Positions 1 through 64,000 of a stretch of DNA of 64,000 bases are shown here, in pieces; the first letter of the stretch is position 1, and each line of letters opens with the position of its first letter. The notes under the pieces were generated by a model that saw nothing but the letters and a program-made list of their open reading frames with translations, made no database searches and was not told the DNA's origin. The stretch lies in IMG/VR virus record IMGVR_UViG_3300002143_000235, positions 124,001 to 188,000 of that record. One strand, given 5' to 3'. The position numbers and the translations under genes are program-made.

Positions 1-2
1 AA

Positions 3-548
3 AATAACTCTGCAATCCCAGGTAAGTACAACTTTACAGTTGCTGCTGGTACTGAAGATGGACGCGTTCTTGGAATCGCTGGTACTGAAATGAACTTCAC
101 TGAAGATGATTACGTATCAATGAATCAAATGGGATCAAACCCAATCTCTTACGCTAAGAACATTGGATGGTATATTGAAACTGAATACACAGCTTCTCAA
201 GCACCTAAATCAGCATTGTCTTACTTACACGTACGTGAGATCTTGATTGACCTTGAGAACGAGCTTTACGCAATGTTGTTCAAGTACCAATACAAGTTCA
301 ACATTCCAGCTGTAAGAGCTAAAATCAAACGTGAGGCTGATGACATCTGTCAGAAATACCTTGATCGTTCTGCAATCACTGCGTTCACGAACGTAATTGA
401 TGATACGAATAACACTGCCGATCTTATCGACAACCAATTCGGTCTATTGAATACATACATCACACCGGTACGAGCTATGGCAACTATCGTCAACGTGATC
501 GGTATCCAATCAAACGGAGCAGTTGGTACAAGTACAGGATTCAACTAA
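3..548 (+). CDS. Tail sheath protein, C-terminal part (runs off window start)
   Basis: Frame open from nt 3. SALSYLHVREILI...YQYKFN...VIDDTNNT..ID..G.....ITPVRAM matches the contractile sheath C-terminal domain. Confidence 0.85.
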   Translation, partial: NNSAIPGKYNFTVAAGTEDGRVLGIAGTEMNFTEDDYVSMNQMGSNPISYAKNIGWYIETEYTASQAPKSALSYLHVREILIDLENELYAMLFKYQYKFNIPAVRAKIKREADDICQKYLDRSAITAFTNVIDDTNNTADLIDNQFGLLNTYITPVRAMATIVNVIGIQSNGAVGTSTGFN

Positions 549-564
549 AAACAAATACAATGAG

Positions 565-592
565 AAAGGCATCCAATTGGATGCCTTTTTTT
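565..592 (+). terminator. Intrinsic terminator
   Basis: AAAGGCATCC-AATT-GGATGCCTTT followed by a T-run, between convergent genes. Confidence 0.85.
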
Positions 593-782
593 ATGCTTCT
601 ACTTTTTCAGTTTCAGCAGTAAGTACATGTTGAATTTGTGGAAGAATCATTTTCTGAAACTTCATACTCACAAATTTAATTCGTTGATGCTTATTATCAC
701 CTACTGCTTGTCTAAATACAAGACCAGATAAGTGATCTGCTAATTTTGCGTAGTTCTCGTTTGTGATGAGGTATGTCAGCAT
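591..782 (-). CDS. Small hypothetical protein
   Basis: 63-aa ORF in a minus-strand run. Confidence 0.5.
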   Translation of the reverse strand: MLTYLITNENYAKLADHLSGLVFRQAVGDNKHQRIKFVSMKFQKMILPQIQHVLTAETEKVEA

Positions 783-799
783 TTCGTTTTATATTTTTT

Positions 800-1102
800 T
801 TATTTTATAGTGAATACAAAAGTAACTGTTCCAGCCATTGAACCTACGCCAGTCCATGCAAAATCAGCAAAGCTCGGTTGACCTTTTCCAGTTGTTTTGT
901 CATAAATTTCTTTTCCAAGTCCAGCAAGAATTGCTGTTCCAAATCCTATAAATATTGCTTGTTTTTTACTTGCACCAAGTTTATACGATACAAAAGATGA
1001 TGTATAGGATATTACTGTACCTGCTACAAAATGCTTAACCTTATCTGGTTGAATTTGAGATTGTGATAAAAAAGGTATTAAAAAAAATAATAAGAATTTC
1101 AT
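800..1102 (-). CDS. YfiM/DUF2279-like membrane protein
   Basis: Signal peptide, DKVKHFVAG, GLGKEIYD and SFADFAW motifs. Confidence 0.65.
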   Translation of the reverse strand: MKFLLFFLIPFLSQSQIQPDKVKHFVAGTVISYTSSFVSYKLGASKKQAIFIGFGTAILAGLGKEIYDKTTGKGQPSFADFAWTGVGSMAGTVTFVFTIK

Positions 1103-2496: not shown

Positions 2497-2501
2497 ACGA
2501 A

Positions 2502-2768
2502 TTATACTTGTTCCAGATTAATTTGTTTGATAACTGAACGATCTACTTTTAAAATTTTTGATGCAAGACCATGTAAAATAGTATTTGTACTATCAACACA
2601 GTAATCATATAATAATTCAATATGTCTATCGGATAATTCCAATGCTGTATTATCACCAGTCTTATCCATTACAGATTGTGTTAGGATACAGATAACGTTA
2701 AAATCAGTAGATGCTTCCAAAACATCGCGTTCTGGAATAGATAATCTAATTGATGTGAGTGTATTCAT
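2502..2768 (-). CDS. Hypothetical protein
   Basis: ORF co-oriented with and adjacent to the clamp gene. Confidence 0.65.
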   Translation of the reverse strand: MNTLTSIRLSIPERDVLEASTDFNVICILTQSVMDKTGDNTALELSDRHIELLYDYCVDSTNTILHGLASKILKVDRSVIKQINLEQV

Positions 2769-2864
2769 ATGTCTTAAATGTTATTAAAATCTATGTTTTT
2801 AGAACTATTTTTTAAAAAAGTTTAAAAAAATGTGGTAAAAGTTTTTTTATATCAAATACTTTGC

Positions 2865-2886
2865 TATCTTTGTATTGTTCAATTAA
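2865..2886 (+). promoter_or_regulatory. Bacteroidota-type -7 promoter element (TAnnTTTG) plus conserved TATTGTTCAATTAA
   Basis: TATCTTTG-TATTGTTCAATTAA. Near-identical copies at 5824, 29972 and 59760-59781 (minus). Confidence 0.75.
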
Positions 2887-2897
2887 TAATTACAAAT

Positions 2898-3254
2898 ATG
2901 AAAAACAGAGAATTCGCAGCAGCAGTAAACGCAAAAGCAGCACACTTAAGAGAAATTAAACGTGAAGCATCACAACGTTGTAGAGCACGCCAAAAAGCAA
3001 TCCTTAATGGTGAATTGTTTACACCAGAACTTGCTCTTCGTTCATTGCAACCAAAAGCAATCAAAGTTGAGAACTTCAAAATGGAGATTGGTAACAAAAC
3101 CATTCGTCTTAACAGAAATGGTGGTACAGCTGTTGCAATGATTACAGCAGAAAAAACTGAATCAGGAACTGTTAAAACAAGAAAGTCTTTCAAAGACATT
3201 CAAACAGCAGTTCGTGAATTTATGACAGTTACAAGCACAGTAGCTACTGCATAA
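2898..3254 (+). CDS. Hypothetical early protein
   Basis: Start MKNREF follows the host-type promoter. Terminator at about 3275-3302. Confidence 0.75.
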   Translation: MKNREFAAAVNAKAAHLREIKREASQRCRARQKAILNGELFTPELALRSLQPKAIKVENFKMEIGNKTIRLNRNGGTAVAMITAEKTESGTVKTRKSFKDIQTAVREFMTVTSTVATA

Positions 3255-3313
3255 TTGAAACAAACTACAACGACAAGAGGATCATTTGGTCCTCTTTTTT
3301 TTATTAAAAATTA

Positions 3314-3350
3314 TGCCACATATGTAATATGTATGCATATATGCACATAT
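3314..3350. repeat. Dispersed intergenic element, copy 1
   Basis: TGCCACATATGTA-N15-TGCACATAT. Copy 2 at 43297-43332. Confidence 0.65.
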
Positions 3351-3384
3351 TTAGACTTTGATTTATATTTTTTGTATAAAGTAT

Positions 3385-3867
3385 ATGAATTATAAATTAA
3401 CCATTGAATTAGTACCTGAAACAGCGTGGTATTCAAATGTACGTAGTAATGTTACTCGAACAGAATGGGATAAACTCCGTAAGGAATGCTATAGAAGAGC
3501 TGGACACAAATGTGAAATCTGTTCATCGACCGGACTTGTACAAGGATTCAAATGGCCTGTTGAATGTCATGAAATATGGGATTACAACGATGAGACACAT
3601 ATTCAAAAATTGATTGGTCTTATCTCACTCTGTCCTTTATGTCACAAGGTAAAACATCCAGGTCTTGCTGGTATACGCGGTGAATCGGATCTTGTTATCA
3701 AACAATTAATGCATGTCAATGAAATGTCGAAATATGATGCGACAAGGTATGTATCAAGTGCTTTTCGTATATTTGAACAAAGATCAGAACACAAATGGGA
3801 GTGTGATATCACATACTTAAATAATTATTTACAAGGACCAAATGATTGGATTACTAAAACAGATTGA
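3385..3867 (+). CDS. HNH-family nuclease-like protein
   Basis: CEIC...ECHEIW...LCPLCHKVKH zinc/HNH signature. Confidence 0.75.
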   Translation: MNYKLTIELVPETAWYSNVRSNVTRTEWDKLRKECYRRAGHKCEICSSTGLVQGFKWPVECHEIWDYNDETHIQKLIGLISLCPLCHKVKHPGLAGIRGESDLVIKQLMHVNEMSKYDATRYVSSAFRIFEQRSEHKWECDITYLNNYLQGPNDWITKTD

Positions 3868-4396
3868 AAAGGAACAGATAATAGCTATTCTACGCTATCC
3901 TGTTAAATATTTTAAAACGCTTTACATTGATTATGAAAAGCCATATGTTTCAAGATTGCAATATGATCTTGGAAATGGTTACAGATTATCATTTCACAAA
4001 ATTGAAGAATGTGATACAAATGAAGCGCTTTATCATCCACATCCTTGGCCATCAGCTATTCATGTAATTAAAGGATCATATGAAATGGGAATTTCGTATT
4101 CAGAACAAAATTATCATTATGGTCAAGAAAATGCTAACAACAGTTTCCAATCCGAAATCGTAAAAAATGAAGTATGTAAACTTGTTGTGAATGATGGTTT
4201 CTATTATGAGATGCTCAATAGACATGGTTGGCATTATGTAAAACCATTAGATCAATGTTCAATGAGTGTAATGCTTATGGGACCAAAATGGTATGATGGT
4301 AGTCGACCAACGAAACAGTTACATGAATTGGATCCAGTTGTTGCTAATAATATTAGATTGGAGTTTTTGAATTATTATCTTGATTTATTAGTGTAA
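3842..4396 (+). CDS. Cupin-fold protein
   Basis: HPHPW.....IKGSYE...WHYV cupin metal motif. Confidence 0.6.
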   Translation: MIGLLKQIEKEQIIAILRYPVKYFKTLYIDYEKPYVSRLQYDLGNGYRLSFHKIEECDTNEALYHPHPWPSAIHVIKGSYEMGISYSEQNYHYGQENANNSFQSEIVKNEVCKLVVNDGFYYEMLNRHGWHYVKPLDQCSMSVMLMGPKWYDGSRPTKQLHELDPVVANNIRLEFLNYYLDLLV

Positions 4397-4446
4397 AAGT
4401 TTTTTAAGTAGTTTTATTTTCGTATTTTTGTACAAAATGAAAATCA

Positions 4447-5724
4447 ATGGGAAAAGAGGTTAGACTTATCAAGGTTGATGGTGATGCGAACAATAATAAG
4501 TATTACAACATGGTCGAAAACGGTGATGGTACTTTCACTGCAACTTACGGACGTGTTGGAGCAGCTAAACCGCAGACCGATACTAAACCGATGTCGAAAT
4601 GGGATGCAACATATCGTGAAAAGACGAGTATCAAGAAAGGTTATGTCGATCAGACAGATCTATTCATTGATGAATCAGTAACGATTGATGTTGATGCATC
4701 AACAGGAACTAAAAAGAAATCAGTATTTAAAGATTTTCTTTCATCAAGATCAGCAGCAGTTGTACAAATGGTACGAGATCTTCAAGGTTGGGCAAAGGGA
4801 TCGGTAGAACGAAACTATACCGTAAGTTCTGAAGCTGTAACACAGAAGCAAGTTGACAAAGCACAGGAAACACTTGATCAAATTGTAGGTTTTCAATTAG
4901 ATGCTAACAACATTGCTGAGTTCAACAAACTCTTGCAGACGTTTTACAGTATTGTGCCTCGTAAGATGAAACATGTGAAAACACATCTTGTTGATCCTGA
5001 TTCTGATCTTACTGAACGTAAGAATGAAATCATTACGGAAGAACAGACAACACTCGACGTTATGGCAGGTCAGGTAAAATTGAATGCTGATATGAAAGAC
5101 AGTGATGTTGAAGAAGATCAGGAAGAAGTTGAAACTGACATTTTGAAATCATCTGGTCTTGATGTTATCGAAGTAACTGATGATGCTGTGATCAATAAGA
5201 TCAAAGGTCTGATGGCTGATAACTCACGAAAATTCCGTAAAGCATTTGAGGTTGTAAATACCAAAACACAATCAGCTTACGAGGGACAAATTAAGAAAGC
5301 CAAAAATCAAAAAGAAGAACTTTTCTGGCATGGTTCACGAAATGAAAATTGGTGGTCTATCCTTACAACCGGTTTACTTATTCGTCCATCCAATGCCGTT
5401 TATTCTGGTTCAATGTTTGGTGATGGTATCTACTTTGCAGACAAGTTTCAGAAGTCATTTGGATACACGTCAGGACGTGGTTCATACTGGGCTGGTGGAA
5501 ATGCCAATACAGCAATTTTAGCTCTTTACAATGTGCATGTGGGTGAACAAAAGATCATCAAACGCCATGATTCATCTTGCTACAAATTGTGTCATTCAAT
5601 CCTTGCAAAAGAGAACTGTGATTCTGTATTTGCACAAGGTGGAATTGATCTTCGTAACAATGAATACATTGTTTATCAATCACAACAAAATACAGTTAAG
5701 TATCTTGTAGTTGTTGAGGCATAA
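4447..5724 (+). CDS. PARP-like ADP-ribosyltransferase (WGR, helical regulatory and catalytic domains)
   Basis: N-terminal NNNKYY..YGRVG (WGR), FYSIVPR (regulatory domain), and catalytic H-Y-E motifs FWHGS, GSMFGDGIYFAD..KS.GY and NNEYIVY. Confidence 0.9.
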   Translation: MGKEVRLIKVDGDANNNKYYNMVENGDGTFTATYGRVGAAKPQTDTKPMSKWDATYREKTSIKKGYVDQTDLFIDESVTIDVDASTGTKKKSVFKDFLSSRSAAVVQMVRDLQGWAKGSVERNYTVSSEAVTQKQVDKAQETLDQIVGFQLDANNIAEFNKLLQTFYSIVPRKMKHVKTHLVDPDSDLTERKNEIITEEQTTLDVMAGQVKLNADMKDSDVEEDQEEVETDILKSSGLDVIEVTDDAVINKIKGLMADNSRKFRKAFEVVNTKTQSAYEGQIKKAKNQKEELFWHGSRNENWWSILTTGLLIRPSNAVYSGSMFGDGIYFADKFQKSFGYTSGRGSYWAGGNANTAILALYNVHVGEQKIIKRHDSSCYKLCHSILAKENCDSVFAQGGIDLRNNEYIVYQSQQNTVKYLVVVEA

Positions 5725-5730
5725 AAATAA

Positions 5731-5790
5731 TTTACTACTTTTACTACTACTTTTACTACTACTTTTACTACTACTTTTACTACTACTTTT
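5731..5790 (+). repeat. Tandem repeat (TTTTACTACTAC)x4 plus partial units
   Basis: Perfect 12-mers at 5739, 5751, 5763 and 5775. Confidence 0.95.
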
Positions 5791-5791
5791 T

Positions 5792-5821
5792 AAAACCGGT
5801 GCGTTTCGTATCGGTTTTTTT
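5792..5821 (+). terminator. Intrinsic terminator after PARP
   Basis: AAAACCGGTGCG-TTT-CGTATCGGTTTTTT. Confidence 0.75.
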
Positions 5822-5853
5822 ATTATATTTGTATTGTTCAATTAATTATTTAT

Positions 5854-6069
5854 ATGTCATTTACAGATTTTTTAGGAGCAGAGCTAAATGTTGGTGATGA
5901 GGTCGTTTTCATTTCCCGTGGATACAGAGACTTCAGTCGTGGAACTGTTGTTTCGTTTACACCACAAAAGGTTCGCATTGCACATATTCATCGCAATATA
6001 CCAGATTATGCAAAGTTACTTTTGCAAGATCCATATCAGTTAATCAAAGTACCCATTCAAACAAAATAA
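5854..6069 (+). CDS. Small SH3/KOW-like hypothetical protein
   Basis: ELNVGDEVVF...GTVVSFTPQKVRI. Follows the TATATTTG promoter at 5824. Confidence 0.7.
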   Translation: MSFTDFLGAELNVGDEVVFISRGYRDFSRGTVVSFTPQKVRIAHIHRNIPDYAKLLLQDPYQLIKVPIQTK

Positions 6070-6071
6070 TT

Positions 6072-6473
6072 ATGAAACTCTTTGGAAATAAAAATTCAAG
6101 TGTTGTAATCATCAACGGTAAGAAATATACTGGAAGTGGTGATATTCAGATTACCGATAATAAGATTCTAATCGGTGGAAAGGATGTGACAAAGGATCTT
6201 GAAAATTCACTCACTGTTACCATCGAGGTCCATGGTGATGCATCGATAGATGCTGATTGTTGTGAGAAAATCACGGTGAACGGAAATGCTGAAAGCGTTA
6301 AAACAATGTCAGGCAGTGTTCAATGTCAGAATGTTGCTGGTAGTATCAACACACAGTCAGGTGATGTTCGTTGTGGTGATGTCGGAAATGATGTAAAAAC
6401 AATGTCAGGTGATGTAACAGCTAAATCTATTATGGGTAAGGTGAGCACTATGTCAGGTGATATCAAACGTTAA
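6072..6473 (+). CDS. Beta-strand-repeat (DUF4097/adhesin-like) protein
   Basis: Repeated VKTMSG(D/S)V units. Confidence 0.7.
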   Translation: MKLFGNKNSSVVIINGKKYTGSGDIQITDNKILIGGKDVTKDLENSLTVTIEVHGDASIDADCCEKITVNGNAESVKTMSGSVQCQNVAGSINTQSGDVRCGDVGNDVKTMSGDVTAKSIMGKVSTMSGDIKR

Positions 6474-6477
6474 GGAT

Positions 6478-6834
6478 ATGCAAGTAAAGATCAAAAATAT
6501 TGTAGTACACAACAAGCTTGAACTGATTAAGCTTCTTCGTGTAAATTTGGGTTATACAATGGATAATTGCATGAAGCTTGCAACACAACTCAGTGATAAC
6601 GAGACAATGGAATTGGATGAACATATCACATATGCTATACATGAGGGAAGGGATACTAAATGTATTACTTTCGATTTCGATAGGGAAGAAGAACCTGTAT
6701 ACAATCCGTATGCTTATCAGAACGATCTCGACTACATCGATGCGAAGGGATGGTATGACTCATTACCTGAGACACAGAAAGAATTTGTACGAACATTGGC
6801 AAGGGATTTTGTCCCTGGTCCAGCAATGGGATAA
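6478..6834 (+). CDS. Hypothetical protein
   Basis: Tightly packed ORF in an operon, ATG at 6478. Confidence 0.7.
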   Translation: MQVKIKNIVVHNKLELIKLLRVNLGYTMDNCMKLATQLSDNETMELDEHITYAIHEGRDTKCITFDFDREEEPVYNPYAYQNDLDYIDAKGWYDSLPETQKEFVRTLARDFVPGPAMG

Positions 6835-6837
6835 AGA

Positions 6838-7716
6838 ATGGAAAGCATGAGATTAAATCAAGAATCAAATCGTGAGATAACGGCTAAGGTTCGAGCAATC
6901 AAACTGATGGAAGAACAAAATAATCAAAATGACATTTGGATGGATTCTATTGTTACTTCAACAAAACCCAGTGCCGATTCTTTACCAGGTTTCTATGAAC
7001 CGGCTGCAAGTATTCAACTTGGTCCACTGACACACAGTACAAGAATTCCTGGAATAGATGAGGATCAGGCTGTCATTATTCGTAACGCATTGACACATAA
7101 TGAGTGTGCACAATTGATTGAGTTTATGAATCAATCAGACAACTTTGAAGATGTTGGTGTACAAGGAATGATGGATCAGAAAGATGAACGTATTGGTTCA
7201 AAACGCACATCAATATGGGCTCCTGAAGTTGCACACCAAATCTGGCAACGTGTAATGCCTTTTCTAAAACCAAAAATGTGCACAAAGTTCACACCAACAG
7301 ATTGGTGGCAAGACAATGATGTAGACTATAACATGTTTTACAAACCAATCGGTATGTCGCCACTATTGCGATTTATGCAATATGAAAACGGTGGTCAACA
7401 TTATGCACATTATGATGCATCGTACATTTATCCTATTTCACAATACCGTACATTAAAGAGTGTTGTGATTTATCTCACAACAAATTATGGTGCTGCAACA
7501 CGTTTTGTAAAAGACGGACAGAATAGTATTCCAATAAACGAACGTAATCATATGGATTGGGATCGTCCAGTTAAGGATGAGGAGATTATTGGTAAGAGTG
7601 AATGCATCAGAGGAAATATTTTGATCTTTGATCATCGTTTGTGTCATGATGTAGAACAATACCTTGGAACTGAGAAACGCATCATTATTCGTGGTGATAT
7701 TATATACGTTGCGTAA
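6838..7716 (+). CDS. 2OG-Fe(II) dioxygenase (prolyl-4-hydroxylase-like)
   Basis: LRFMQY..G..YAHYD, VVIYL, G..LIFDHRLCHD and KRIIIRGD (HxD..H..R). Confidence 0.85.
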   Translation: MESMRLNQESNREITAKVRAIKLMEEQNNQNDIWMDSIVTSTKPSADSLPGFYEPAASIQLGPLTHSTRIPGIDEDQAVIIRNALTHNECAQLIEFMNQSDNFEDVGVQGMMDQKDERIGSKRTSIWAPEVAHQIWQRVMPFLKPKMCTKFTPTDWWQDNDVDYNMFYKPIGMSPLLRFMQYENGGQHYAHYDASYIYPISQYRTLKSVVIYLTTNYGAATRFVKDGQNSIPINERNHMDWDRPVKDEEIIGKSECIRGNILIFDHRLCHDVEQYLGTEKRIIIRGDIIYVA

Positions 7717-8051
7717 TGACAAGACCAAGACCAAAAAAGAATAATCGAGAAGTTCGGTACCAATCATTACAAATTAATTGGAAACTTTTGTTCAAAATGT
7801 TGTTTATATTTGTTACATGTGGTATTATTGTAAATCAGTGTGAATCGAATACAACATTAAAACTCGAGAATGAAATTTTACAGTATGAACTTCTTGAAAA
7901 GGACAGTATTATTCATACACTGACACCAAAACCTGTCATTGAAAAAAAGATCGATTCTATTAAAGTAGAATCAATACAAGTAAAACGCATACCTAAACCG
8001 ATAGTAGTTGATACAATTATACCGGTTGAAATTATACACGACACATTATAA
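7716..8051 (+). CDS. Membrane-anchored hypothetical protein
   Basis: One transmembrane segment followed by a coiled coil. Confidence 0.65.
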   Translation: MTRPRPKKNNREVRYQSLQINWKLLFKMLFIFVTCGIIVNQCESNTTLKLENEILQYELLEKDSIIHTLTPKPVIEKKIDSIKVESIQVKRIPKPIVVDTIIPVEIIHDTL

Positions 8052-8458: not shown

Positions 8459-8529
8459 TTTTTTTTTCTCTTTTTGCACCGCCGTATCATTTTTTTATCT
8501 ATATTTGTAATGTAATCAAAAAGCAATAT

Positions 8530-9072
8530 ATGTCAACAGCAACACAAAAAGAAGTTATCCAGGTAAATACTCAAGACTTGATGCGAGTTCTTACTCAAGT
8601 TAAAGGAGCTAAACCAGCAACGATCTTAACAACTACAGAAGTAAAAATGAACAAAACTGGTAATCCATACCACGGTCGTATCACAAAACAAGCTGTAGCA
8701 AACATTTTCTTGAACTACAATTATGAGAAAGCAGTAAATGCACGTCTTGTAAAAGAAGGTAAAGAAGCAAATTTTGTTGCAAGTGCACCAGTTTGGGGTG
8801 AAGCAATTCCAGGAACACCACTTGTTCTTTACAAAGGTTCTTTGTATTTGACTGTTGGATACCTTACAAATAACACACCGAAGTCTGAATACTTCTGTGA
8901 TGGTGAGCCTATTGCAAAAGACACAATCGCAGATTACTTGAAACCAAAAAGTTCAAGTGCTGCTAAGCAAGGTCTTGAAGCAGAAGACGAAGTTGTTGTT
9001 CGTAAATTCAAACTTGAGTCAATCAAAGAAATCCGTATGGGTGGAAAGATTTACCAAATTATCGCAGACTAA
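8530..9072 (+). CDS. Hypothetical early protein
   Basis: TATATTTG at 8500 upstream and a terminator downstream (about 9094-9124). Confidence 0.8.
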   Translation: MSTATQKEVIQVNTQDLMRVLTQVKGAKPATILTTTEVKMNKTGNPYHGRITKQAVANIFLNYNYEKAVNARLVKEGKEANFVASAPVWGEAIPGTPLVLYKGSLYLTVGYLTNNTPKSEYFCDGEPIAKDTIADYLKPKSSSAAKQGLEAEDEVVVRKFKLESIKEIRMGGKIYQIIAD

Positions 9073-9373: not shown

Positions 9374-10471
9374 ATGAAGTTATGGTTTCTCTCTGATGCG
9401 CACATTGGTAAGTACAGCGCAGATTCTGATCGCTGGCTAAATCTCATGCGTAATTATTTCTTTGAATTCTTTATTCCTTTGTTGAAGGAGAATGCAAAAC
9501 CAAATGACAAGTTTTTTTTTCTTGGTGATCTTTTTGATAACCGCACATCGATCGATATGCGAGCTCTTACGCTTGCTGTGGAGATCTTTGAAGAACTTGG
9601 TAAGATAATTGAATGTCATGTTCTTTTAGGTAACCACGATCAACGTATGATGAATGATCCAACAATTAATAGTGTTGTTTCAATTCGGAATATTCCAAAT
9701 GTAACCACCTATTCAACGGATTGTGTAATTGATGTTGATGATCATAAAATTCTTATGCTTCCATGGATTCATGGAAAGAATAGTGAGAAAGAAATCATGA
9801 CCAAACACAAGAATTGTGATATTCTTTTGTGCCATTCAGATTTGAATGGTTGTCGAACACAACTATATCCCACTAGACCACTTAATCGTGATATCCTTGA
9901 TATTGATGATTTTGCTGGTTTTGAGCGTGTATACTCTGGACATATTCATATTGTTCAAACAATCAAGAACTTCACCTTTGTTGGAAGCCCGTATCACCTC
10001 GATAGGAATGACGTGGGGAACCGAAAAGGTGTTTGGGTATATGATACTAAGAAGCGTAAAGATGTGTTCATAGAGAACGATTATTCACCTGAATTTATTA
10101 AACACAAGATTCTTCAATCTAATGATATTGTTACTCTTCAGCAATTATTACAAACAAATAATTTTATTGATGTTGAGATCAGTAAGAATTTATTTTTGAA
10201 TGAACCAAATTTACGTTTAGAATTTGATAAACTTAGTAATAAGTTCAGGATTGAGAACATTGATTATATCGATGATATTGAGGTTGAGAAAAACGTTCAG
10301 AAGGAACAATCTTATGTTAAAGGATTGACAATCAAAGAAGCAAGTGAGGCTTGGTGTGATCGTATCAAAATCAATGTTGATACAGAATTATTTACTGAGA
10401 TTGAGTTCAGACACTTGATGAAAGGAACAATTGAAAATTGTTTCAATCTTCTTACTGCGCAAAAGAAATAA
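9374..10471 (+). CDS. Recombination nuclease, gp47/SbcD/Mre11-like metallophosphoesterase
   Basis: SDAHIG, LGDLFD, LGNHD, SGHIH and VGSPY motifs. Confidence 0.9.
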   Translation: MKLWFLSDAHIGKYSADSDRWLNLMRNYFFEFFIPLLKENAKPNDKFFFLGDLFDNRTSIDMRALTLAVEIFEELGKIIECHVLLGNHDQRMMNDPTINSVVSIRNIPNVTTYSTDCVIDVDDHKILMLPWIHGKNSEKEIMTKHKNCDILLCHSDLNGCRTQLYPTRPLNRDILDIDDFAGFERVYSGHIHIVQTIKNFTFVGSPYHLDRNDVGNRKGVWVYDTKKRKDVFIENDYSPEFIKHKILQSNDIVTLQQLLQTNNFIDVEISKNLFLNEPNLRLEFDKLSNKFRIENIDYIDDIEVEKNVQKEQSYVKGLTIKEASEAWCDRIKINVDTELFTEIEFRHLMKGTIENCFNLLTAQKK

Positions 10472-10841: not shown

Positions 10842-10968
10842 ATTCCATTCAAACATATTTATTTAATAGTACTAAGCCCGTGTAATACGGGCTTTTTATT
10901 TTTAAGTAGTTTGCATTACGTATCTATTTATTTACTATATTTGTCACAACAACATTAAAGAAATAATT

Positions 10969-12243
10969 ATGGCTGAATACTTTGCATTGTGCATTCCAAT
11001 TTTTCTTGGTCTTATTGCATTTTTTCTATTTAACACAAGAGTTACTATTGGTGAAGTGATTCTTCCGACTGTTGCTTGTATGCTACTGATTTTTACAATG
11101 AAAGGTTGTAGTACATCTTACAATACATCGGATACTGAATACCATACAAACAAAGCTTACAAAGTTGTGTATGAAGAAGATTGGAATGAATACATTGAAA
11201 AAACGTGTACTAAAACAGTTTGTACAGGCTCTGGAAAGGATGAAAAGTGTCATACTGAAACATACGACTGTTCATATGTAGATTATCATCCAGCAACATA
11301 TACACTTATAGATGATGCTGAAAATTCATACAGTATCAGTCCTTTAGAATTTGAAAAAATTTGTAAAAAATGGCATGATAAGCATTGGGTAAATATGTAT
11401 CGTGATTATCATAATAATGATGGTGACAAATATTATGGTGAATGGAACGGTGATATAAAAACACTTATTACAACACACAGTACACATAGTTACGAAAATC
11501 GTGTACAAGCTGCTCGATCTATTTATAACTATGAAGAACTTACAGAAAAGGATGTAAAAGATAATCGTCTTATTGAATATCCTGATCCTAATGGTTATGA
11601 AATGCCAGCGATTCTTTCAAATGATGTGAAATTTCCAAAGTGGAAGCAAGATGAATTAAATCGAATCAATGGTATTTTAGGTGCAAAAAAACAAGTGCAA
11701 GTATTTCTACTTGTATGGAAAAATATGCCGAGTGATGTTGCCGAGATGCAAAAAGCTTACTGGAAAGGTGGAAATAAAAATGAACTTGTTATCTGTGTGG
11801 GTGTTGATAAAAATGAAAACATTGTATGGAATAATGTATTTACATGGTCTGAAAAAGATATTGTAAAAATCAAAATTCGTGATTATTTATTGGATGAACG
11901 TGGAAAGAAATTAAATATTAAAGGTTTAAGTAAATTTACAGAAACAGTTATTGTTAAGGATTGGAAACGTAAACAATTTAAAGATTTTGCATATTTGCAT
12001 ATTGAACTTACACGTGGACAAGTTATTTGGATTTATATCATGACAACAATTGTATCTATTGGACTTACAATTTTTATAGTTGTTAATGGATATAACCCAG
12101 TTTATACTGTATCAAAGTTCAGTACTGATAAGATCAAACAATTCTTCAAAAATCTTGTATATAAGTTGCGTGTATTTTTTATAAACATTTGGACAAAAGT
12201 TGTTAAACTATATTCCAAAATACTAGCACACTTTAAAAAATAA
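10969..12243 (+). CDS. Membrane protein with large extracytoplasmic domain
   Basis: Two N-terminal and one C-terminal TM segments, YWKGGNKNELVICVG, and a host-type promoter at 10936. Confidence 0.75.
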   Translation: MAEYFALCIPIFLGLIAFFLFNTRVTIGEVILPTVACMLLIFTMKGCSTSYNTSDTEYHTNKAYKVVYEEDWNEYIEKTCTKTVCTGSGKDEKCHTETYDCSYVDYHPATYTLIDDAENSYSISPLEFEKICKKWHDKHWVNMYRDYHNNDGDKYYGEWNGDIKTLITTHSTHSYENRVQAARSIYNYEELTEKDVKDNRLIEYPDPNGYEMPAILSNDVKFPKWKQDELNRINGILGAKKQVQVFLLVWKNMPSDVAEMQKAYWKGGNKNELVICVGVDKNENIVWNNVFTWSEKDIVKIKIRDYLLDERGKKLNIKGLSKFTETVIVKDWKRKQFKDFAYLHIELTRGQVIWIYIMTTIVSIGLTIFIVVNGYNPVYTVSKFSTDKIKQFFKNLVYKLRVFFINIWTKVVKLYSKILAHFKK

Positions 12244-15951: not shown

Positions 15952-16020
15952 TTTTTTAATAATTTGCACAACCTATTCATTTTTTATCTATATTTGTAAG
16001 GTAAATTAAAAATAAAAAAT

Positions 16021-16758
16021 ATGACTGAAGTATTTATAACATCTTCGACATCCTACCGCATTGTAAAAAACGGTATTGAAATTTTTGAAACAAAAAACGC
16101 TCTTGCATCAATGAATGATGTATTAAATACACTTGGTTTAAATGCAGACGAAGTTTCAATTTTTTCAGGAGATGGTAATTTTGCACAAGAACATTCAATT
16201 ACGGGTATTGGTGCCTATCGTGAAATTTTAACAAATTACGATGCAAACGAAGACGAAACTCAAAGTGTTGACGAAATCATTGCTGAGATGAACGGCGGAA
16301 TGAAAGCACGTAATGCTGATCGTTATCGTCACATTGTAACACAAGAAACACCTACAGTTGAAGACGAAGAAGAAACGGTAACAGATAAACAATCTGAATC
16401 AAATCAACACGTACCAGTGGGAGCTGTTGAACGTCCAGAAATTGGTAATCTTATTTACATTGATGGAATGAAGAGTATTCTTCGTACAATTCTTGGTGGT
16501 GTTGCGACAGTATCTGCAGTTCATGATACAAATACTTATGTTCCAAACGGTGAATCGGATTCTTATATTGACGATCAATACGATGAAGAAGACTATAATG
16601 GTAATTACAGCGGTGAAGAAGATATTGAAACCACTGAGGCTAATATTATGGTTGAGATTGAAGAGTTCCCCGGAATATACTTCTCTTGGTCAATGTTACG
16701 TGCACGTCAAGAAGAACTTGCAGCACAGTACGGTTACAAACCAGCACAACAATTGTAA
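16021..16758 (+). CDS. Acidic hypothetical early protein
   Basis: TTTGCA and TATATTTG promoter elements upstream, terminator at about 16771-16803. Confidence 0.75.
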   Translation: MTEVFITSSTSYRIVKNGIEIFETKNALASMNDVLNTLGLNADEVSIFSGDGNFAQEHSITGIGAYREILTNYDANEDETQSVDEIIAEMNGGMKARNADRYRHIVTQETPTVEDEEETVTDKQSESNQHVPVGAVERPEIGNLIYIDGMKSILRTILGGVATVSAVHDTNTYVPNGESDSYIDDQYDEEDYNGNYSGEEDIETTEANIMVEIEEFPGIYFSWSMLRARQEELAAQYGYKPAQQL

Positions 16759-16863
16759 TTATTGATAAAATAAAAAAAACGTTTCAAATTGAAACGTTTT
16801 TTTATTTCGTAATTATTAAACAACTATCATTTTGTGATTTATAATAAAGAAAATAAATTACGT

Positions 16864-17493
16864 ATGGTTTCAGCTCTTACTTCGACTGCAAGACGTCGAA
16901 AGCTACCGCAAGGTTTCACACCGATGATTGTTGAAGAAACAGATTTAAATGCAAATAGCATTTCTGTTTTTGATAAGTTGATGCAGGAACGTATCATATT
17001 TTTAGGTGTAGAAATAGATGATTACATCGCAAATACGATTAATGCTCAATTATTATATTTAAATTCTGAAAGTGCTGATGAACCTATTTGGATGTATATC
17101 AACTCACCGGGCGGAAGTGTTTATTCTGGTCTAGCAATCTATGATACAATGAATATGATTGACGCACCAGTTTACACTTGTGTGATGGGATTAGCTGCTT
17201 CAATGGCATTTATTCTTGCTATTGCTGGTGAGAAGGGTCATAGATATGCTTTACCAAACAGTAAACTAATGTTGCACCAACCACTTGGTGGAATTGATTA
17301 CGCACAAGCTACTGATATTGCAATTCACAACGATGAAATTCAAGATCTTAAAAAAGATATAAACACAATAATTGCTGAACACACTGGTCAATCGATTGCC
17401 AAAGTGAAAAAACTTTCTGAGCGTGATACGTGGATGAAAGCTAGTGATGCATTAGCTTTCGGAGCAATTGATGTAGTGCGAACAAAAAAATAA
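16864..17493 (+). CDS. clpP: ATP-dependent Clp protease proteolytic subunit
   Basis: ERIIFLG, YINSPGG, AASMA (Ser), MLHQP (His) and ERDTWM (Asp). AAAC-N18-TATA at 16818-16843. Confidence 0.95.
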   Translation: MVSALTSTARRRKLPQGFTPMIVEETDLNANSISVFDKLMQERIIFLGVEIDDYIANTINAQLLYLNSESADEPIWMYINSPGGSVYSGLAIYDTMNMIDAPVYTCVMGLAASMAFILAIAGEKGHRYALPNSKLMLHQPLGGIDYAQATDIAIHNDEIQDLKKDINTIIAEHTGQSIAKVKKLSERDTWMKASDALAFGAIDVVRTKK

Positions 17494-25837: not shown

Positions 25838-25897
25838 GTCTTAGTATGTCGTAGATTGAAAAATGTTTCGTATATTTGTCAAACAAAACAAATAGAT

Positions 25898-26128
25898 ATG
25901 GGATATTCAAATGAAATCAAGCCTACGTGCCGACTAAGTGAGATTAAAGATCGCACAGCTGTAAACGGTGAAGTATTCGTAGTTCGAGATACAAATAACA
26001 AAGCAGCGGCTTTGGTTTATGCTAACGATGGTGATAATAACTCAGATCGCGTACGATCAGCATTTGCTAAAAGTACAGGAGTAAAATTCACTGATACACG
26101 TTGTTCACGTTTGAAAAACGTTAAGTAA
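25898..26128 (+). CDS. Small basic hypothetical protein (paralog of 1194-1499)
   Basis: TATATTTG at 25871 upstream. Start MGYSNEIK. Confidence 0.7.
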   Translation: MGYSNEIKPTCRLSEIKDRTAVNGEVFVVRDTNNKAAALVYANDGDNNSDRVRSAFAKSTGVKFTDTRCSRLKNVK

Positions 26129-61116: not shown

Positions 61117-61569
61117 TTATTGGTAGATAGCTTTAAATATTCCAATGTACTTATTTTTGTCCATAACTGCACCATTCATTTTAATGACTTTCATATCATC
61201 AACACGGTCGCAGATTCGGTCACATACAATTCGATTTGAAAATTTATAATCAAAATCAGTTGGATTCCAATCATTATATAAATCATCTGGTAGATTATGG
61301 AACATGTCATCAGTCATAGTAACTGCAACATTTCGTGTAATTAATTCGTTTCGTAGTTCGTTGAAACGATCATGTAGAAATTTTAGCTTGTCATAAAAGA
61401 ATACAACATGTCCTGTACCTAATCTAAATTGAATTGGTTGATCAACTTTACGAACACGATCTGGATTGGATCGTACAGCATTTGGTATTCGAACTATCTC
61501 ACGGTATTCAGCCATCAGATGTTGATCACATAAATGTGCTGGTCGTATCTTTGCGTTTATTCTTGTCAT
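61117..61569 (-). CDS. denV: Pyrimidine-dimer DNA glycosylase (T4 endonuclease V)
   Basis: MTRIN..., L.DQHLMAEYREI.R and FRLGTGHVVFFYDKL.FL..R...L..E. Confidence 0.92.
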   Translation of the reverse strand: MTRINAKIRPAHLCDQHLMAEYREIVRIPNAVRSNPDRVRKVDQPIQFRLGTGHVVFFYDKLKFLHDRFNELRNELITRNVAVTMTDDMFHNLPDDLYNDWNPTDFDYKFSNRIVCDRICDRVDDMKVIKMNGAVMDKNKYIGIFKAIYQ

Positions 61570-61629: not shown

Positions 61630-62349
61630 TTATTTGTTTAACATTTTATTAAAAGCTAATAAAACTGTAAGCTGATAGTGATCAAGTTTACTTTCTACAT
61701 ATGCTGCATCGACTTTAGTAATTCCGCCATATCTAAAGTTCAATAATTCACCAACAATAGATGCGTTTGTATCAGTATCACCACCACACTCTATAGCTCG
61801 AATGATTCCTTCTTGTGGTGTTGAACATTGTGCAGCAAGATTCAAACAAAATTTTACTGTATCATCAGCACGTACTTTGAATTTTTTAAACGGTTTAACT
61901 TGAGCAAGCCGTTTGTTGTATTGCTCAGTATAAGCTAAATACAATTTGTAAACAGCTTCGTATGATACGGTGTGTTTATGTGATCCACGAAGTGTGTCAA
62001 AAAGTTGTGGAAGTGGATCTTGAATGTACATCAATGGACTTACACGCATCAAACAACCATTTCCAAATGAATCAACAACATCAAGACCATCACCAGTTAA
62101 CCAAGCTTTGAATCCTTTTCCATAGTGATCACCATTGTACAGATTTCCCCATCTGTGATAATTTTCAGTAAAATCAAATCCAAGCATCATTGCTTCAGCT
62201 GTTGCGAGTGTCATGATTGTGTCATCAGTGATAACTGAATTGGGATTATGTAAATTTACATTTGTATAATCACCTCTCATCGAAGGAAATTCAAATGGTT
62301 GACCAACAAGATCTCCTAGAATTGCACCGTATAATTTATATTTTGTCAT
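61630..62349 (-). CDS. ADP-ribosylglycohydrolase (ARH/DraG family)
   Basis: GAILGD..G..FEF, TDDT.MT, SFGNGCLMRVSP and GGDTDTNASIVG. Confidence 0.9.
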   Translation of the reverse strand: MTKYKLYGAILGDLVGQPFEFPSMRGDYTNVNLHNPNSVITDDTIMTLATAEAMMLGFDFTENYHRWGNLYNGDHYGKGFKAWLTGDGLDVVDSFGNGCLMRVSPLMYIQDPLPQLFDTLRGSHKHTVSYEAVYKLYLAYTEQYNKRLAQVKPFKKFKVRADDTVKFCLNLAAQCSTPQEGIIRAIECGGDTDTNASIVGELLNFRYGGITKVDAAYVESKLDHYQLTVLLAFNKMLNK

Positions 62350-63253: not shown

Positions 63254-64000
63254 TTATTTAGAAAAATATTCATGAACAGCATAAACAATTGCAACAGTAT
63301 CACAATCGTAATGTCCTGAACAATTGATGCAATTGATCTCAACAACTTTGAATCCTTCATTTGTAATAGCAATGTCAATAACAAATGCATCAGCTGGTTG
63401 ATATGTATCAATCATTTCTTGGGCAAAGGTAAACAATTCTAGTTCAGCATGAATATTTGTTCGTTCAGTTATTACACGCATATTGATCATGTACTGTGAC
63501 GCAGAGATGATCTTTCCATCAACCACAAAGAAACGTACTTCACGGAAGATATCTTTACGGGAACAGATTTGAACAGGCGTATCAGCATTGAGCGCACCGG
63601 TATGCACATTATTCAATGCCCATTCAACATATTCATCCCATGATTCTTTTGTAAATACCTGACCTGTGAATGCTTTGTTGTCTTCACACGGTCTAGCAAA
63701 AAATAAGTATCCAGGTTCTTTGAATGTATCAGAAAATTTGATAATCTGAGAATCGTGGTTAAGCATATGTGTACCATAGTGTGGAGCATAGATGCGGTAA
63801 TCATGGTTGTCATTATGCATTGAACCAGGTGACCATCCGTATTTTTTCGCAATATGAGCCATTTTTACAGTTCCCCAACAAAATACATCCTTTGTGTCAA
63901 AAGACTCGTGTATGATGTCCTGTGTGAACGGTACGATATGCACAGACTGGTACGGATACTCTAATCCTTCGAATGCATCGATGATTGACTGATACTTTGC
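63254..64000 (-). CDS. ATP-grasp protein (R2K/DUF4343-like), start beyond window
   Basis: FARP..D.KAFTG.V, EVRFFVVDGKIISASQY and FVIDIA......VVEIN. Frame open to the window end. Confidence 0.8.
   Translation of the reverse strand, partial: AKYQSIIDAFEGLEYPYQSVHIVPFTQDIIHESFDTKDVFCWGTVKMAHIAKKYGWSPGSMHNDNHDYRIYAPHYGTHMLNHDSQIIKFSDTFKEPGYLFFARPCEDNKAFTGQVFTKESWDEYVEWALNNVHTGALNADTPVQICSRKDIFREVRFFVVDGKIISASQYMINMRVITERTNIHAELELFTFAQEMIDTYQPADAFVIDIAITNEGFKVVEINCINCSGHYDCDTVAIVYAVHEYFSK

What the first reader, a model, noticed from the sequence alone, without database searches (positions are those of the whole stretch)
4447..5724. Phage-encoded PARP with eukaryote-like WGR, regulatory and catalytic (H-Y-E) architecture
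The sequence shows a WGR domain, a helical regulatory-domain motif (FYSIVPR, compare PARP1 FYTLIPH) and an intact H-Y-E triad. This is the PARP2/3-like layout activated by DNA breaks. It sits behind a host-type promoter (TATTTTTG at 4423), which suggests early expression. PARP-like genes are rare in phages. Inferred roles include DNA-end protection, modification of host defence proteins or manipulation of NAD+.
Basis: partly seen in the sequence, partly recalled or inferred. Interest (0 to 1): 0.75.

Follow-up and report, generated by a model that had tools for sequence, protein, structure and literature searches.

The report
Jumbo-phage PARP enzyme (WGR-helical-catalytic)
A large freshwater phage, probably infecting Bacteroidota, carries an intact PARP-type ADP-ribosyltransferase built like the DNA-break-sensing core of human PARP1/2/3; this enzyme family has already been noted in phages and bacteria but has never been tested in a phage.

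Summary
Window 4447..5724 (+) is one 425-aa ORF.

- **Domains:** it has a WGR domain, a helical regulatory domain and a PARP catalytic domain. H295, Y329 and E406 form the H-Y-E triad.
- **Structure:** the AlphaFold model (pLDDT 86) aligns end to end with human PARP1 residues 544-1007 (Z 26.7).
- **Conservation:** the triad and key WGR residues are kept in 149-150 of 150 relatives.
- **Source:** an IMG/VR jumbo-phage contig of 313.7 kb with T4-like genes, from river and wastewater samples.
- **Promoter:** the TATTTTTG at 4423 fits the Bacteroidota -7 box. That motif clusters 10-30 nt upstream of starts genome-wide. Timing of expression is unproven.

The gene is not new as a kind. It belongs to PHROG 23333. 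It is annotated as PARP in Cellulophaga, Xanthomonas and Klebsiella phages, and is discussed in two comparative-genomics papers. Related copies are chromosomal in many Bacteroidota.

New context found here:
- the same phage encodes an ADP-ribosylglycohydrolase, a NadV-type NAMPT and an NAD-dependent ligase;
- PARP-carrying phage contigs carry NadV and ARH more often than published baselines;
- most relatives have an adjacent small winged-helix partner gene, which was not found in this genome.

Most likely it is a nucleic-acid-activated ADP-ribosyl "writer". Its target and whether it makes polymer are unknown.

The parts
4423..4430 (+). Promoter-like -7 box TATTTTTG (Bacteroidota TAnnTTTG type), 16 nt upstream of the PARP start. 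It follows a T-rich run and is followed by TA. There is no -33 TTG and no Shine-Dalgarno sequence.
   Evidence: Sequence read. The motif is not enriched overall (100 found, 107 expected). Genome-wide, its end falls 10-29 nt before start codons 39 times, against 1-5 per 10-nt bin beyond 50 nt. The sigma-70 scan found nothing here.
4447..5724 (+). PARP-family ADP-ribosyltransferase gene, 425 aa, ATG start, TAA stop.
   Evidence: (PHROG 23333, E 5.5e-57).
4447..4671 (+). WGR domain (about aa 1-75): a four-stranded sheet plus helix. The motif is Y34-G35-R36. N17, K18, Y20, K59, K64 and Y66 are conserved.
   Evidence: Pfam WGR E 1e-5, above cut-off. Model strands 4-48 and helix 49-60. Aligned to PARP1 from residue 544. 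Conservation in 148-150 of 150 relatives.
4738..5106 (+). Helical (regulatory, HD) domain, about aa 98-220, five helices, including FYSIVPR (aa 166-172). An acidic, lower-confidence linker (aa about 211-230) follows.
   Evidence: phmmer alignment to the PARP1 HD. Model helices 103-123, 133-148, 153-169, 177-180 and 188-217. VIA-align 98..425 to PARP1 662..1007, Z about 25. Pfam PARP_reg is sub-threshold (E 0.043). L112, Y124, P171, R172, E199, Q200 and D204 are invariant.
5122..5721 (+). ART (catalytic) domain, about aa 226-425. It holds H295 (nt 5329-5331), Y329 (5431-5433) and E406 (5662-5664), plus K336, S337 and Y340, which align with the SKSxxY segment of PARP1.
   Evidence: Pfam PF00644, 80 bits. 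Alignments to PARP1. Conservation in 149-150 of 150 relatives.
5733..5790 (+). Perfect 12-bp tandem repeat (TACTACTTTTAC, 4.8 copies) between the PARP stop codon and the terminator. It varies in length between strains.
   Evidence: TRF, 100% matches. A river-metagenome contig skips 5726-5769 (table 5).
5792..5818 (+). Terminator-like hairpin (12 pairs) plus T-run that ends the PARP transcription unit. It is directly followed by a strong consensus promoter cassette (TTATTATATTTGTATTGTTCAATT) for the next gene.
   Evidence: terminator scan; cassette alignment.
61630..62349 (-). ADP-ribosylglycohydrolase (ARH/DraG family), 239 aa. It is a candidate eraser for the PARP product and lies 56 kb away next to a DenV-like pyrimidine-dimer glycosylase.
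   Evidence: Genome search. Pfam PF03747 E 1.3e-21. The metal-site motifs TDDT and GGDTDT are visible in alignments to ARH structures. The functional link to PARP is inferred only.

Best explanation
The gene encodes an active NAD+-dependent ADP-ribosyltransferase of the PARP clade, made of the minimal sensor-to-catalyst module WGR, helical domain and ART.

By analogy with PARP1/2/3, the WGR domain would bind a nucleic-acid feature, most likely a DNA end or nick. That binding would release the helical domain's block on the NAD+ site. The enzyme would then ADP-ribosylate itself, nearby proteins or the DNA end.

In this phage it appears to be transcribed from its own host-type promoter as a single-gene unit. 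It sits in a region of small, individually promoted genes among DNA-handling genes (HNH nuclease, SbcD/Mre11-like nuclease).

The phage also supplies a possible eraser (ARH) and regenerates NAD+ from the nicotinamide by-product (NadV-type NAMPT). I therefore read it as the writer of a phage-run, reversible ADP-ribosylation circuit tied to DNA ends during infection.

Shown: domain architecture, an intact and conserved active site, the phage origin, and the co-encoded ARH, NadV and ligase genes.
Inferred: nucleic-acid activation, the target, mono versus poly product, timing, and any functional coupling to ARH or NadV.
For: - Architecture and fold: (Z 26.7 over PARP1 544-1007).
- Selection: H295, Y329, E406, K336 and Y340, WGR residues N17, K18, G35, R36, K59 and Y66, and helical-domain residues P171, R172, E199, Q200 and D204 are kept in at least 97% of 150 relatives spanning phages and bacteria. 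All three domains therefore matter.
- Transcription unit: positionally supported -7 box and terminator hairpin.
- DNA-handling neighbours: HNH endonuclease at 3358..3867 (E 1.7e-54) and SbcD/Mre11-like nuclease at 9374..10471 (E 1.1e-50). In Cellulophaga phage phi17:2 the PARP gene lies two genes from a DNA ligase.
- Partner gene: most relatives have an adjacent winged-helix gene, sometimes fused to a second WGR.
- NAD/ADPr toolkit in the same genome: ARH and NadV (NF006629, 528 bits against a 405 cut-off).
- Co-occurrence: NadV in 19/30 PARP-positive large viral contigs, 9/11 of those at least 90% complete, and 4/5 GenBank PARP-positive phages. The published baseline is 22-33% (PMC9503650). 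ARH in 7/30 against about 5% published. In 13 terminase-related PARP-negative contigs, NadV was found in 1 and ARH in 0.
Against: - No biochemical or expression evidence exists for any phage member in the literature I could search.
- The W of WGR is a Y here.
- Gene neighbourhood is conserved only among close relatives: SbcD was near PARP in 2 of 80 viral loci by tblastn.
- ARH lies 56 kb away, and half of the complete PARP-positive phage genomes have neither ARH nor a macrodomain.
- NadV may serve the phage's NAD-dependent ligase or counter host NAD+ depletion rather than PARP.
- The co-occurrence statistics ignore shared ancestry. My control contigs are mostly 14-54% complete.
- The usual winged-helix partner was not found in this genome, which is 80% complete.
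- PARP3 shows that an H-Y-E triad does not guarantee polymer synthesis.
Confidence: 0.6

Rival explanations
1. Host-takeover enzyme. Like T4 Alt, ModA and ModB, it ADP-ribosylates host RNA polymerase, translation factors or nucleoid proteins to redirect the cell. The WGR domain would only localise it to nucleic acid.
For: - This is the reading offered for phage PARPs in PMC7824862 and PMC9503650.
- The host-type promoter fits expression by unmodified host polymerase.
- The gene lies about 8 kb from the terminase. PMC9503650 treats that position as a hint that an ART is packaged into the head.
Against: - The T4 enzymes are R-S-E ARTs without WGR or a helical domain. Here the whole sensor module is as conserved as the active site, which argues for regulated rather than constitutive activity.
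- In Cellulophaga phage phi17:2 the PARP is not among the genes labelled structural, although neighbours are.
- The same family is chromosomal and seemingly vertically inherited in Bacteroidota. There it cannot be a takeover tool.
Confidence: 0.2
2. Counter-defence or DNA-end protection. The enzyme caps phage DNA ends with ADP-ribose, or modifies host nucleases or defence proteins that act at DNA ends. The effect would shield replicating or packaged linear DNA.
For: - From general knowledge, not tested here: PARP1/2/3 can ADP-ribosylate terminal phosphates of DNA, and ARH3-type enzymes reverse this.
- The phage has an ARH and end-processing nucleases nearby.
- PMC9503650 notes that ARH enzymes favour macromolecular conjugates.
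Against: - There is no direct evidence.
- No PADLOC hit for the gene or its neighbours, apart from a generic 2OG oxygenase.
- The gene is patchily distributed even among terminase relatives (0 of 13).
Confidence: 0.12
3. Phage-borne exclusion or abortive module. The PARP senses incoming foreign linear DNA from a superinfecting phage. It then burns NAD+ or modifies replication proteins to block the competitor.
For: - Bacteroidota keep the same two-gene unit (PARP plus winged-helix protein) on their chromosomes, a layout typical of small conflict systems.
- Phage NAD+ salvage could protect the carrier from its own NAD+ drain.
Against: - No match to known defence families.
- The bacterial clade tracks taxonomy rather than hopping.
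- This genome lacks the partner gene.
Confidence: 0.08

Closest known systems
Phage PARPs already annotated: PHROG 23333; Cellulophaga phages phi17:2 and phi4:1; Xanthomonas phages XacN1 (BBA65562.1) and Xoo-sp13; Stenotrophomonas phages CM1 and RAS14; Klebsiella phages 05F01 and FBKp34
   Same: They share the length and the WGR-helical-ART order, aligning over 96-100% of the query. All are uncharacterised experimentally. Four of five examined also carry NadV.
   Different: They are only 24-32% identical, and 40% for the uncultured 462-kb phage LR756500. The window's protein belongs to a separate all-viral clade of freshwater and wastewater contigs. The Cellulophaga phage keeps the winged-helix partner next to PARP; this phage does not.
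Bacterial PARPs of Bacteroidota (Spirosoma, Larkinella, Fibrisoma, Arsenicibacter, Flexithrix, Flavilitoribacter, Saprospiraceae MAGs), and the WGR + regulatory + catalytic bacterial PARPs reviewed in PMC8120803 (Herpetosiphon, Clostridioides)
   Same: They share the three-domain layout and are 40-49% identical over the full length. The triad and WGR residues are identical.
   Different: They are chromosomal and form one clade of 75 (support 98) separate from the window's viral clade. They are usually followed by the small winged-helix gene (50 of 80 loci). I did not place Herpetosiphon PARP in the tree.
Human PARP1 (WGR-HD-ART part), PARP2 and PARP3
   Same: The fold and domain order match (Z 26.7, 368 residues, to PARP1 544-1007; PARP2 and PARP3 Z about 25). 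H-Y-E, the K-S...Y segment after the Y, and the FYxxxP helix in the regulatory domain are all present.
   Different: - About 22% identity.
- No zinc fingers, BRCT or N-terminal tail; the protein starts at the WGR.
- Y replaces W in the WGR motif.
- The helical domain is shorter (about 120 aa, five helices).
- N404 occupies the position two residues before the catalytic Glu, where the alignment shows Y in PARP1.
- DNA activation and the product are untested.
T4 Alt / ModA / ModB phage ADP-ribosyltransferases
   Same: They are phage-encoded and NAD+-dependent, with the ART fold superfamily.
   Different: They belong to the R-S-E clade, are mono-ARTs and have no WGR or helical domain (PMC8120803). 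Sequence searches show no similarity.

Membership tests
PARP / ARTD clade (Pfam PF00644) | ART catalytic fold recognised by the family model above its curated cut-off | tested here: met
   80 bits against a 26.7 cut-off, residues 264-424. Foldseek probability 1.00 and VIA Z about 25 to PARP1, PARP2, PARP3 and PARP4 catalytic domains.
PARP / ARTD clade (Pfam PF00644) | H-Y-E catalytic triad | tested here: met
   H295, Y329 and E406 align with the PARP1 motifs WHGSR, GIYFAD and NEYIVY. They are conserved in 149, 150 and 150 of 150 relatives.
DNA-dependent PARPs (PARP1/2/3 type) | WGR domain N-terminal to the catalytic region | tested here: met
   Pfam WGR, 26 bits against a cut-off of 22. The model aligns from residue 1 to PARP1 residue 544 onward. 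The motif is YGR, not WGR.
DNA-dependent PARPs (PARP1/2/3 type) | Helical regulatory domain (PARP_reg, HD) between WGR and ART | tested here: met
   The Pfam model is below cut-off (14.3 against 26.8 bits). However, phmmer aligns residues 100-341 to the PARP1 HD plus ART, and the predicted structure aligns 98..425 to PARP1 662..1007. This rests on a predicted, not a solved, structure.
DNA-dependent PARPs (PARP1/2/3 type) | Catalytic activation by DNA breaks | not testable with these tools
   The protein-DNA complex job was not folded by the tool. This needs an in vitro assay.
DNA-dependent PARPs (PARP1/2/3 type) | Extra N-terminal DNA-binding parts (zinc fingers and BRCT of PARP1; N-terminal tail of PARP2/3) | tested here: not met
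   The WGR starts at residue 4-5 and no other domain is found. This is the bare WGR-HD-ART core, as in bacterial PARPs.
Poly(ADP-ribose) polymerases in the strict sense | Synthesis of ADP-ribose polymers rather than single units | not testable with these tools
   H-Y-E and the K336/Y340 segment are present. These do not separate poly- from mono-transferases.
Bacterial PAR system (PARP with PARG, as reviewed in PMC8120803) | A PARG or macrodomain eraser in the same genome | tested here: not met
   No match to microbial PARG (PF10021) or Macro (PF01661) in the 313.7-kb record. The PF05028 search had no positive control. An ARH-family hydrolase is present instead. The record is about 80% complete.
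PHROG 23333 (phage 'polymerase' = PARP family) | Full-length match to the family profile | tested here: met
   E 5.5e-57, residues 8-423 on profile positions 9-382 of 383.
T4 Alt/Mod-type phage ARTs | R-S-E active site, no WGR or helical domain | tested here: not met
   The triad is H-Y-E and the architecture is WGR-HD-ART.
Known anti-phage defence systems (PADLOC 2.0) | Match to any defence-system protein model | tested here: not met
   No family at E <= 0.01 for PARP, ARH or the winged-helix partner.

The most novel reading that the evidence does not exclude
Phage PARPs form an old viral lineage. The window's all-viral clade and several other viral branches sit outside the single Bacteroidota clade. 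They act as DNA-end-triggered writers in a self-contained phage ADP-ribosylation circuit: PARP writes, ARH erases, and NadV recycles nicotinamide to NAD+. In most relatives a dedicated winged-helix protein serves as cofactor or substrate. The circuit would control processing or protection of phage DNA ends during recombination-dependent replication. If so, PARP-type DNA-damage signalling would have a working viral and prokaryotic counterpart that can be studied in cultured Cellulophaga phages.
Probability: 0.25. Interest if true: 0.75.

Novelty: new member of a known kind. Interest (0 to 1): 0.45.

Why it matters
PARP signalling is central to eukaryotic DNA repair and is a drug target. Its prokaryotic and viral relatives have barely been tested.

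This gene is a clean, compact example: 425 aa, with sensor, regulator and catalyst all conserved. Its family is more common in large phages of Bacteroidota than isolate collections suggest.

The context found here gives concrete hypotheses that can be tested:
- an ARH hydrolase and NAD+ salvage in the same genome;
- enrichment of both among PARP-carrying phages;
- a recurrent, unannotated winged-helix partner gene.

The questions to answer are what turns the enzyme on, what it modifies, and whether phages run reversible ADP-ribosylation at DNA ends. The gene's presence alone is not a discovery, because it is already catalogued.

Tried and rejected
- **Sigma-70 promoter scan (2500-7000):** no site in front of the gene, and counts were at chance (22 found, 20.8 expected). 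I replaced it with the Bacteroidota motif analysis.
- **Protein-dsDNA complex prediction:** counted but not folded by the tool. It gives no evidence either way.
- **Conserved linkage to the SbcD/Mre11-like nuclease:** rejected as a family trait. It was seen only in the closest relatives (2 of 80 viral loci; also L012 and L013).
- **Winged-helix partner in this genome:** HMM search of all six frames with filters off gave a best E of 0.5. A profile comparison with the 71-aa ORF downstream of PARP was negative (probability 0.5%).
- **Macro, microbial PARG and eukaryote-type PARG in the own genome:** none found. The PF05028 search had no positive control.
- **PADLOC defence models:** no hit.
- **NCBIfam:** no model matches the PARP.
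- **Expression evidence:** one wastewater RNA library has contigs over 4835-5386. The tool warns that DNA may be present and that the run was chosen using this gene, so I do not count it as transcription.
- **PARP-negative control set from terminase relatives:** only 13 large contigs, mostly 14-54% complete. It is suggestive only.
- **First partner alignment (A2):** I rebuilt the alignment without that row (A3) and did not send the row elsewhere.
Full report

Yes. Window 4447..5724 (+) is a single 425-aa ORF with an ATG start.

Pfam results:
- PARP catalytic domain: 80 bits against a cut-off of 26.7, residues 264-424.
- WGR domain: 26 bits against a cut-off of 22, residues 5-58.
- PARP_reg: sub-threshold at E 0.043.

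Two independent results back the regulatory domain. phmmer against PDB sequences aligns residues 100-341 with the helical and catalytic domains of human PARP1 (E about 4e-15). A second stretch aligns NEYIVY. An AlphaFold2 model built on 50 homologues (mean pLDDT 86.4, pTM 0.74) gave PARP1 bound to a DNA break (4dqy_C) as the best Foldseek match. VIA-align aligned model 1..425 with PARP1 544..1007 (Z 26.7, 368 residues). It aligned 98..425 with PARP1 662..1007, the helical plus ART domains (Z about 25).

The triad is H295, Y329 and E406. In 150 relatives drawn from viral contigs, bacterial genomes and isolate phages these are present in 149, 150 and 150 sequences. K336 and Y340 are universal, as are WGR residues N17, K18, G35, R36, K59 and Y66. 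Several helical-domain residues are equally conserved: P171, R172, E199, Q200 and D204. The WGR motif reads YGR here, and most of the family has Y at that position. All three domains are therefore under purifying selection, and this is not a decayed copy.

**2. What carries it?**

The window is bases 124001-188000 of a 313,708-bp IMG/VR virus record estimated to be 80% complete.
- GC content is 32%.
- There is a cluster of nine tRNA genes.
- It has a T4-type large terminase, T4-like baseplate and spike proteins and an SbcD/gp47-like nuclease.
- It has ClpP and a DenV-like glycosylase.

Near-identical sequence occurs in river, activated-sludge, wastewater and freshwater metagenomes. A nearly identical 169-kb contig exists in IMG/VR.

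The host is probably a member of the Bacteroidota:
- the nearest cellular homologues of the PARP are almost all from that phylum;
- the PARP start codon has no Shine-Dalgarno sequence in front of it;
- the phylum's characteristic -7 promoter box TAnnTTTG sits at a fixed distance before many genes (see section 3).

**3. Promoter and transcription unit**

TATTTTTG is at 4423-4430, 16 nt before the ATG. Across the window the motif is not more frequent than chance (100 found, 107 expected). Its position, however, is not random. Over 452 crude ORFs of the whole genome, the motif ends 10-29 nt before a start codon 39 times, against 1-5 per 10-nt bin further upstream.

About 25 copies belong to a nearly identical cassette: a hairpin, a T-run, then TTATTATATTTGTATTGTTCAATT. 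From my own knowledge, this recalls the promoter-early stem-loop cassettes of T4-type phages. One such cassette (hairpin 5792-5818) ends the PARP unit and starts the next gene.

The PARP's own box is a weaker variant. It has a T-rich run before it and TA after it, but no -33 TTG and no hairpin. A host-type promoter, and hence expression without phage factors, is therefore plausible. Timing has not been shown. Contigs from one wastewater RNA library cover 4835-5386, but this cannot be taken as proof of transcription.

**4. How common and how new?**

- GenBank phages: 16 of 50,697 records match. Most are already labelled poly(ADP-ribose) polymerase, in Cellulophaga, Xanthomonas, Klebsiella and Stenotrophomonas phages.
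- PHROGs: the protein matches PHROG 23333 end to end.
- IMG/VR: two narrow peptide patterns recovered 191 confirmed viral contigs, many of 100-500 kb.
- Metagenomic protein set: more than 3,500 proteins match, with the candidate cap reached.
- Cluster representatives: among 1.84 billion representatives at 50% identity, 479 match at E <= 1e-30.
- Literature: phage PARPs are mentioned in PMC7824862 (citing the XacN1 protein) and in PMC9503650. The latter lists PART/PARP among the most frequent viral ART families. Bacterial WGR-regulatory-catalytic PARPs are reviewed in PMC8120803, and an early phage example is in PMC1266365.
- My searches found no experimental work on a phage PARP.

The gene is thus a new member of a known but functionally unexplored kind.

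**5. Relatives and evolution**

A scan of one genome per prokaryotic species found 130 genomes with a full-length relative (40-49% identity). Nearly all are Bacteroidota. Isolates with the gene on large chromosomal contigs include Fibrisoma limi, Larkinella, Spirosoma soli, Arsenicibacter rosenii, Flexithrix dorotheae and Flavilitoribacter nigricans.

In a FastTree phylogeny of 150 sequences, rooted on the distant XacN1 and Klebsiella phage proteins:
- the bacterial copies form one clade of 75 (support 98) whose inner branches follow taxonomy;
- the window's protein lies in an all-viral clade of 50 (support 99), within a subclade of nine (support 99);
- several other viral lineages branch outside both.

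This argues against a recent capture from a host. Three limits apply: the rooting rests on long phage branches, the sampling was driven by peptide patterns, and no eukaryotic sequences were included.

None of 13 large contigs with a related terminase carries a PARP. The gene is therefore accessory in this phage lineage.

**6. Context bearing on function**

Immediate neighbours on the same strand are an HNH endonuclease (3358..3867), a cupin-like protein (weak PHROG match), small ORFs of unknown function, a 2OG-Fe(II) oxygenase (6838..7716) and an SbcD/Mre11-like nuclease (9374..10471). Only close relatives share this arrangement.

The whole genome has no macrodomain and no microbial PARG. It does have:
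- an ARH-family hydrolase at window 61630..62349 (-) with intact metal-site motifs;
- a NadV-type nicotinamide phosphoribosyltransferase;
- candidate NMN adenylyltransferases with weak matches, and four Nudix proteins;
- an NAD-dependent DNA ligase.

Co-occurrence in PARP-positive viral contigs over 105 kb, compared with jumbo-phage figures from PMC9503650:

| Gene | PARP-positive contigs | Of those at least 90% complete | Published baseline |
|---|---|---|---|
| NadV family | 19/30 | 9/11 | 22-33% |
| ARH | 7/30 | 3/11 | about 5% |
| Macro | 9/30 | 3/11 | 56% |

Four of five GenBank PARP-positive phages also have NadV. In LR756500 the ARH and NadV genes are adjacent. Simple binomial tests give p about 6e-4 for both the NadV and the ARH enrichment. 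My own control of 13 terminase-related, PARP-negative contigs had NadV in 1 and ARH in 0.

These comparisons ignore shared ancestry. The control contigs are very incomplete. NadV also has other plausible clients, namely the ligase and defence against host NAD+ depletion. The association is a lead, not proof.

**7. A recurrent partner gene, absent here**

In 50 of 80 bacterial loci an ORF of about 85-100 aa follows the PARP gene within 0-500 nt on the same strand.
- It has no Pfam family.
- It folds confidently (pLDDT 89.5) as a winged helix-turn-helix, with only generic winged-helix matches in fold searches.
- Some bacterial versions are about 300 aa. Two that I scanned carry a WGR domain of their own.
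- An HMM of the domain finds it within 8 kb of PARP in 24 viral loci, often directly adjacent.
- It also matches the ORF immediately downstream of PARP in Cellulophaga phage phi17:2, which is followed by a DNA ligase.

It was not detected anywhere in this phage's 313.7-kb record, nor beside the closest relatives. Either this subclade works without it or the gene lies in the missing fifth of the genome.

**8. Most likely mechanism**

I consider it about 90% likely that the protein is an active NAD+-dependent ADP-ribosyltransferase. This rests on the intact, universally conserved active site in a confident PARP fold.

I put roughly 60% on it being switched on by binding a nucleic-acid structure through the WGR domain and release of the helical domain. 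The whole sensor module is as conserved as the catalytic centre, and the layout is the one that works this way in PARP1/2/3. This is an analogy and has not been tested.

Polymer versus single-unit product is an open question, slightly under even odds for polymer.

The biological role is the weakest part. I favour a role at DNA ends during phage DNA metabolism, reversible through the ARH and supported by NAD+ salvage. The alternatives are host takeover, counter-defence or end protection, and superinfection exclusion.

**9. Verdict**

The finding is correct and well described, but the kind of gene is already catalogued, so overall interest is moderate. The most useful products of this check are:
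- the host-phylum assignment;
- the evidence that the promoter motif is real;
- the writer, eraser and salvage context;
- the unannotated winged-helix partner family;
- the pointer to cultured Cellulophaga phages as an experimental system.

Noticed in passing
window 5792-5850, 8470-8530, 10910-10969, 15960-16021, 25840-25898, 29945-30002; minus strand 1102-1160, 59750-59810, 61569-61620; about 25 copies genome-wide: A near-identical regulatory cassette: a hairpin (often GTGATAC...GTATCAC), a T-run, then TTATTATATTTGTATTGTTCAATT just before a start codon. This is a terminator followed by a strong Bacteroidota-type promoter, reminiscent of the promoter-early stem-loop cassettes of T4-type phages. 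Metagenome contigs from related strains diverge exactly at these cassettes (loose ends at about 2860-2895 and 5846-5850). This suggests the cassettes are recombination boundaries for gene shuffling.
   Followed up: partly
window 5733-5790: A perfect 12-bp tandem repeat (TACTACTTTTAC, 4.8 copies) lies right after the PARP stop codon. A river-metagenome variant lacks 42 nt of it (joint 5726 to 5769), so copy number varies between strains. Its function is unknown.
   Followed up: partly
L128:7325-7615, L174:7258-7518, L190:7214-7459 and 7672-7917, L145:7254-8195, L056:7410-7943, L015:7390-8037, L201:7154-7615 (loci of relatives; not in the window): An unannotated winged helix-turn-helix protein family of about 85-100 aa (signature TTTLEVKxxLR...GYxAxQxxVS...NGxFRxY) is encoded next to PARP. 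It occurs in 50 of 80 Bacteroidota loci, at least 24 viral loci and Cellulophaga phage phi17:2. Some bacterial versions are about 300 aa; two that were scanned carry a WGR domain. It has no Pfam or PADLOC match. It was not found in this phage's genome.
   Followed up: partly
window 61117-63943 (- strand): A three-gene stretch: a DenV-like pyrimidine-dimer DNA glycosylase (61117..61569), an ARH-family ADP-ribosylglycohydrolase (61630..62349) and an R2K-clade ATP-grasp protein (63254..63943), with one unannotated ORF between the last two. An ADP-ribose eraser next to a UV-repair enzyme may be meaningful.
   Followed up: partly
window 3358-3867 and 9374-10471: An HNH endonuclease (PHROG 5200, E 1.7e-54) lies immediately upstream of the PARP region. 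An SbcD/Mre11-like (T4 gp47-like) nuclease lies 3.6 kb downstream. A Metallophos protein also lies near PARP in the close relatives L012 and L013, and an SbcD homologue in L068.
   Followed up: partly
window 26216-29716: A cluster of nine tRNA genes: Leu (3), Ile (2), Thr, Cys (2) and Met.
   Followed up: no
genome outside the window: G000 232241-233668 (-), 67431-68120 (-), 190515-192050 (-), 238742-240133 (-): A NadV-type NAMPT (NAMPT_N plus NAPRTase; NCBIfam 528 bits), an NAD-dependent DNA ligase, and two long proteins with weak NadD-like adenylyltransferase domains. The phage both consumes and probably regenerates NAD+.
   Followed up: partly
L166 (JBBACR010000001.1, 425,361 bp) and L056 (IMGVR_UViG_3300035208_004923, 425,361 bp): A contig deposited in a 'Candidatus Pacearchaeota archaeon' MAG has the same length and the same PARP position as an IMG/VR jumbo-phage contig. 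It looks like a phage genome binned into an archaeal MAG. Two other genome hits (a Treponema MAG and an Aminipila MAG) also group with viral contigs in the tree.
   Followed up: no
LR756500.1 43544-45591 (record behind L205): In this 462-kb uncultured phage (PARP 40% identical) the ARH and NadV genes are adjacent, about 13 kb from the PARP gene.
   Followed up: no
window 16834-17493 and 57979-58923: A phage-encoded ClpP protease (PF00574, E 2.6e-69) and an IMPDH/GMP-reductase family enzyme (PF00478, E 1.1e-59). XacN1 also has a GMP reductase a few kb from its PARP gene.
   Followed up: no
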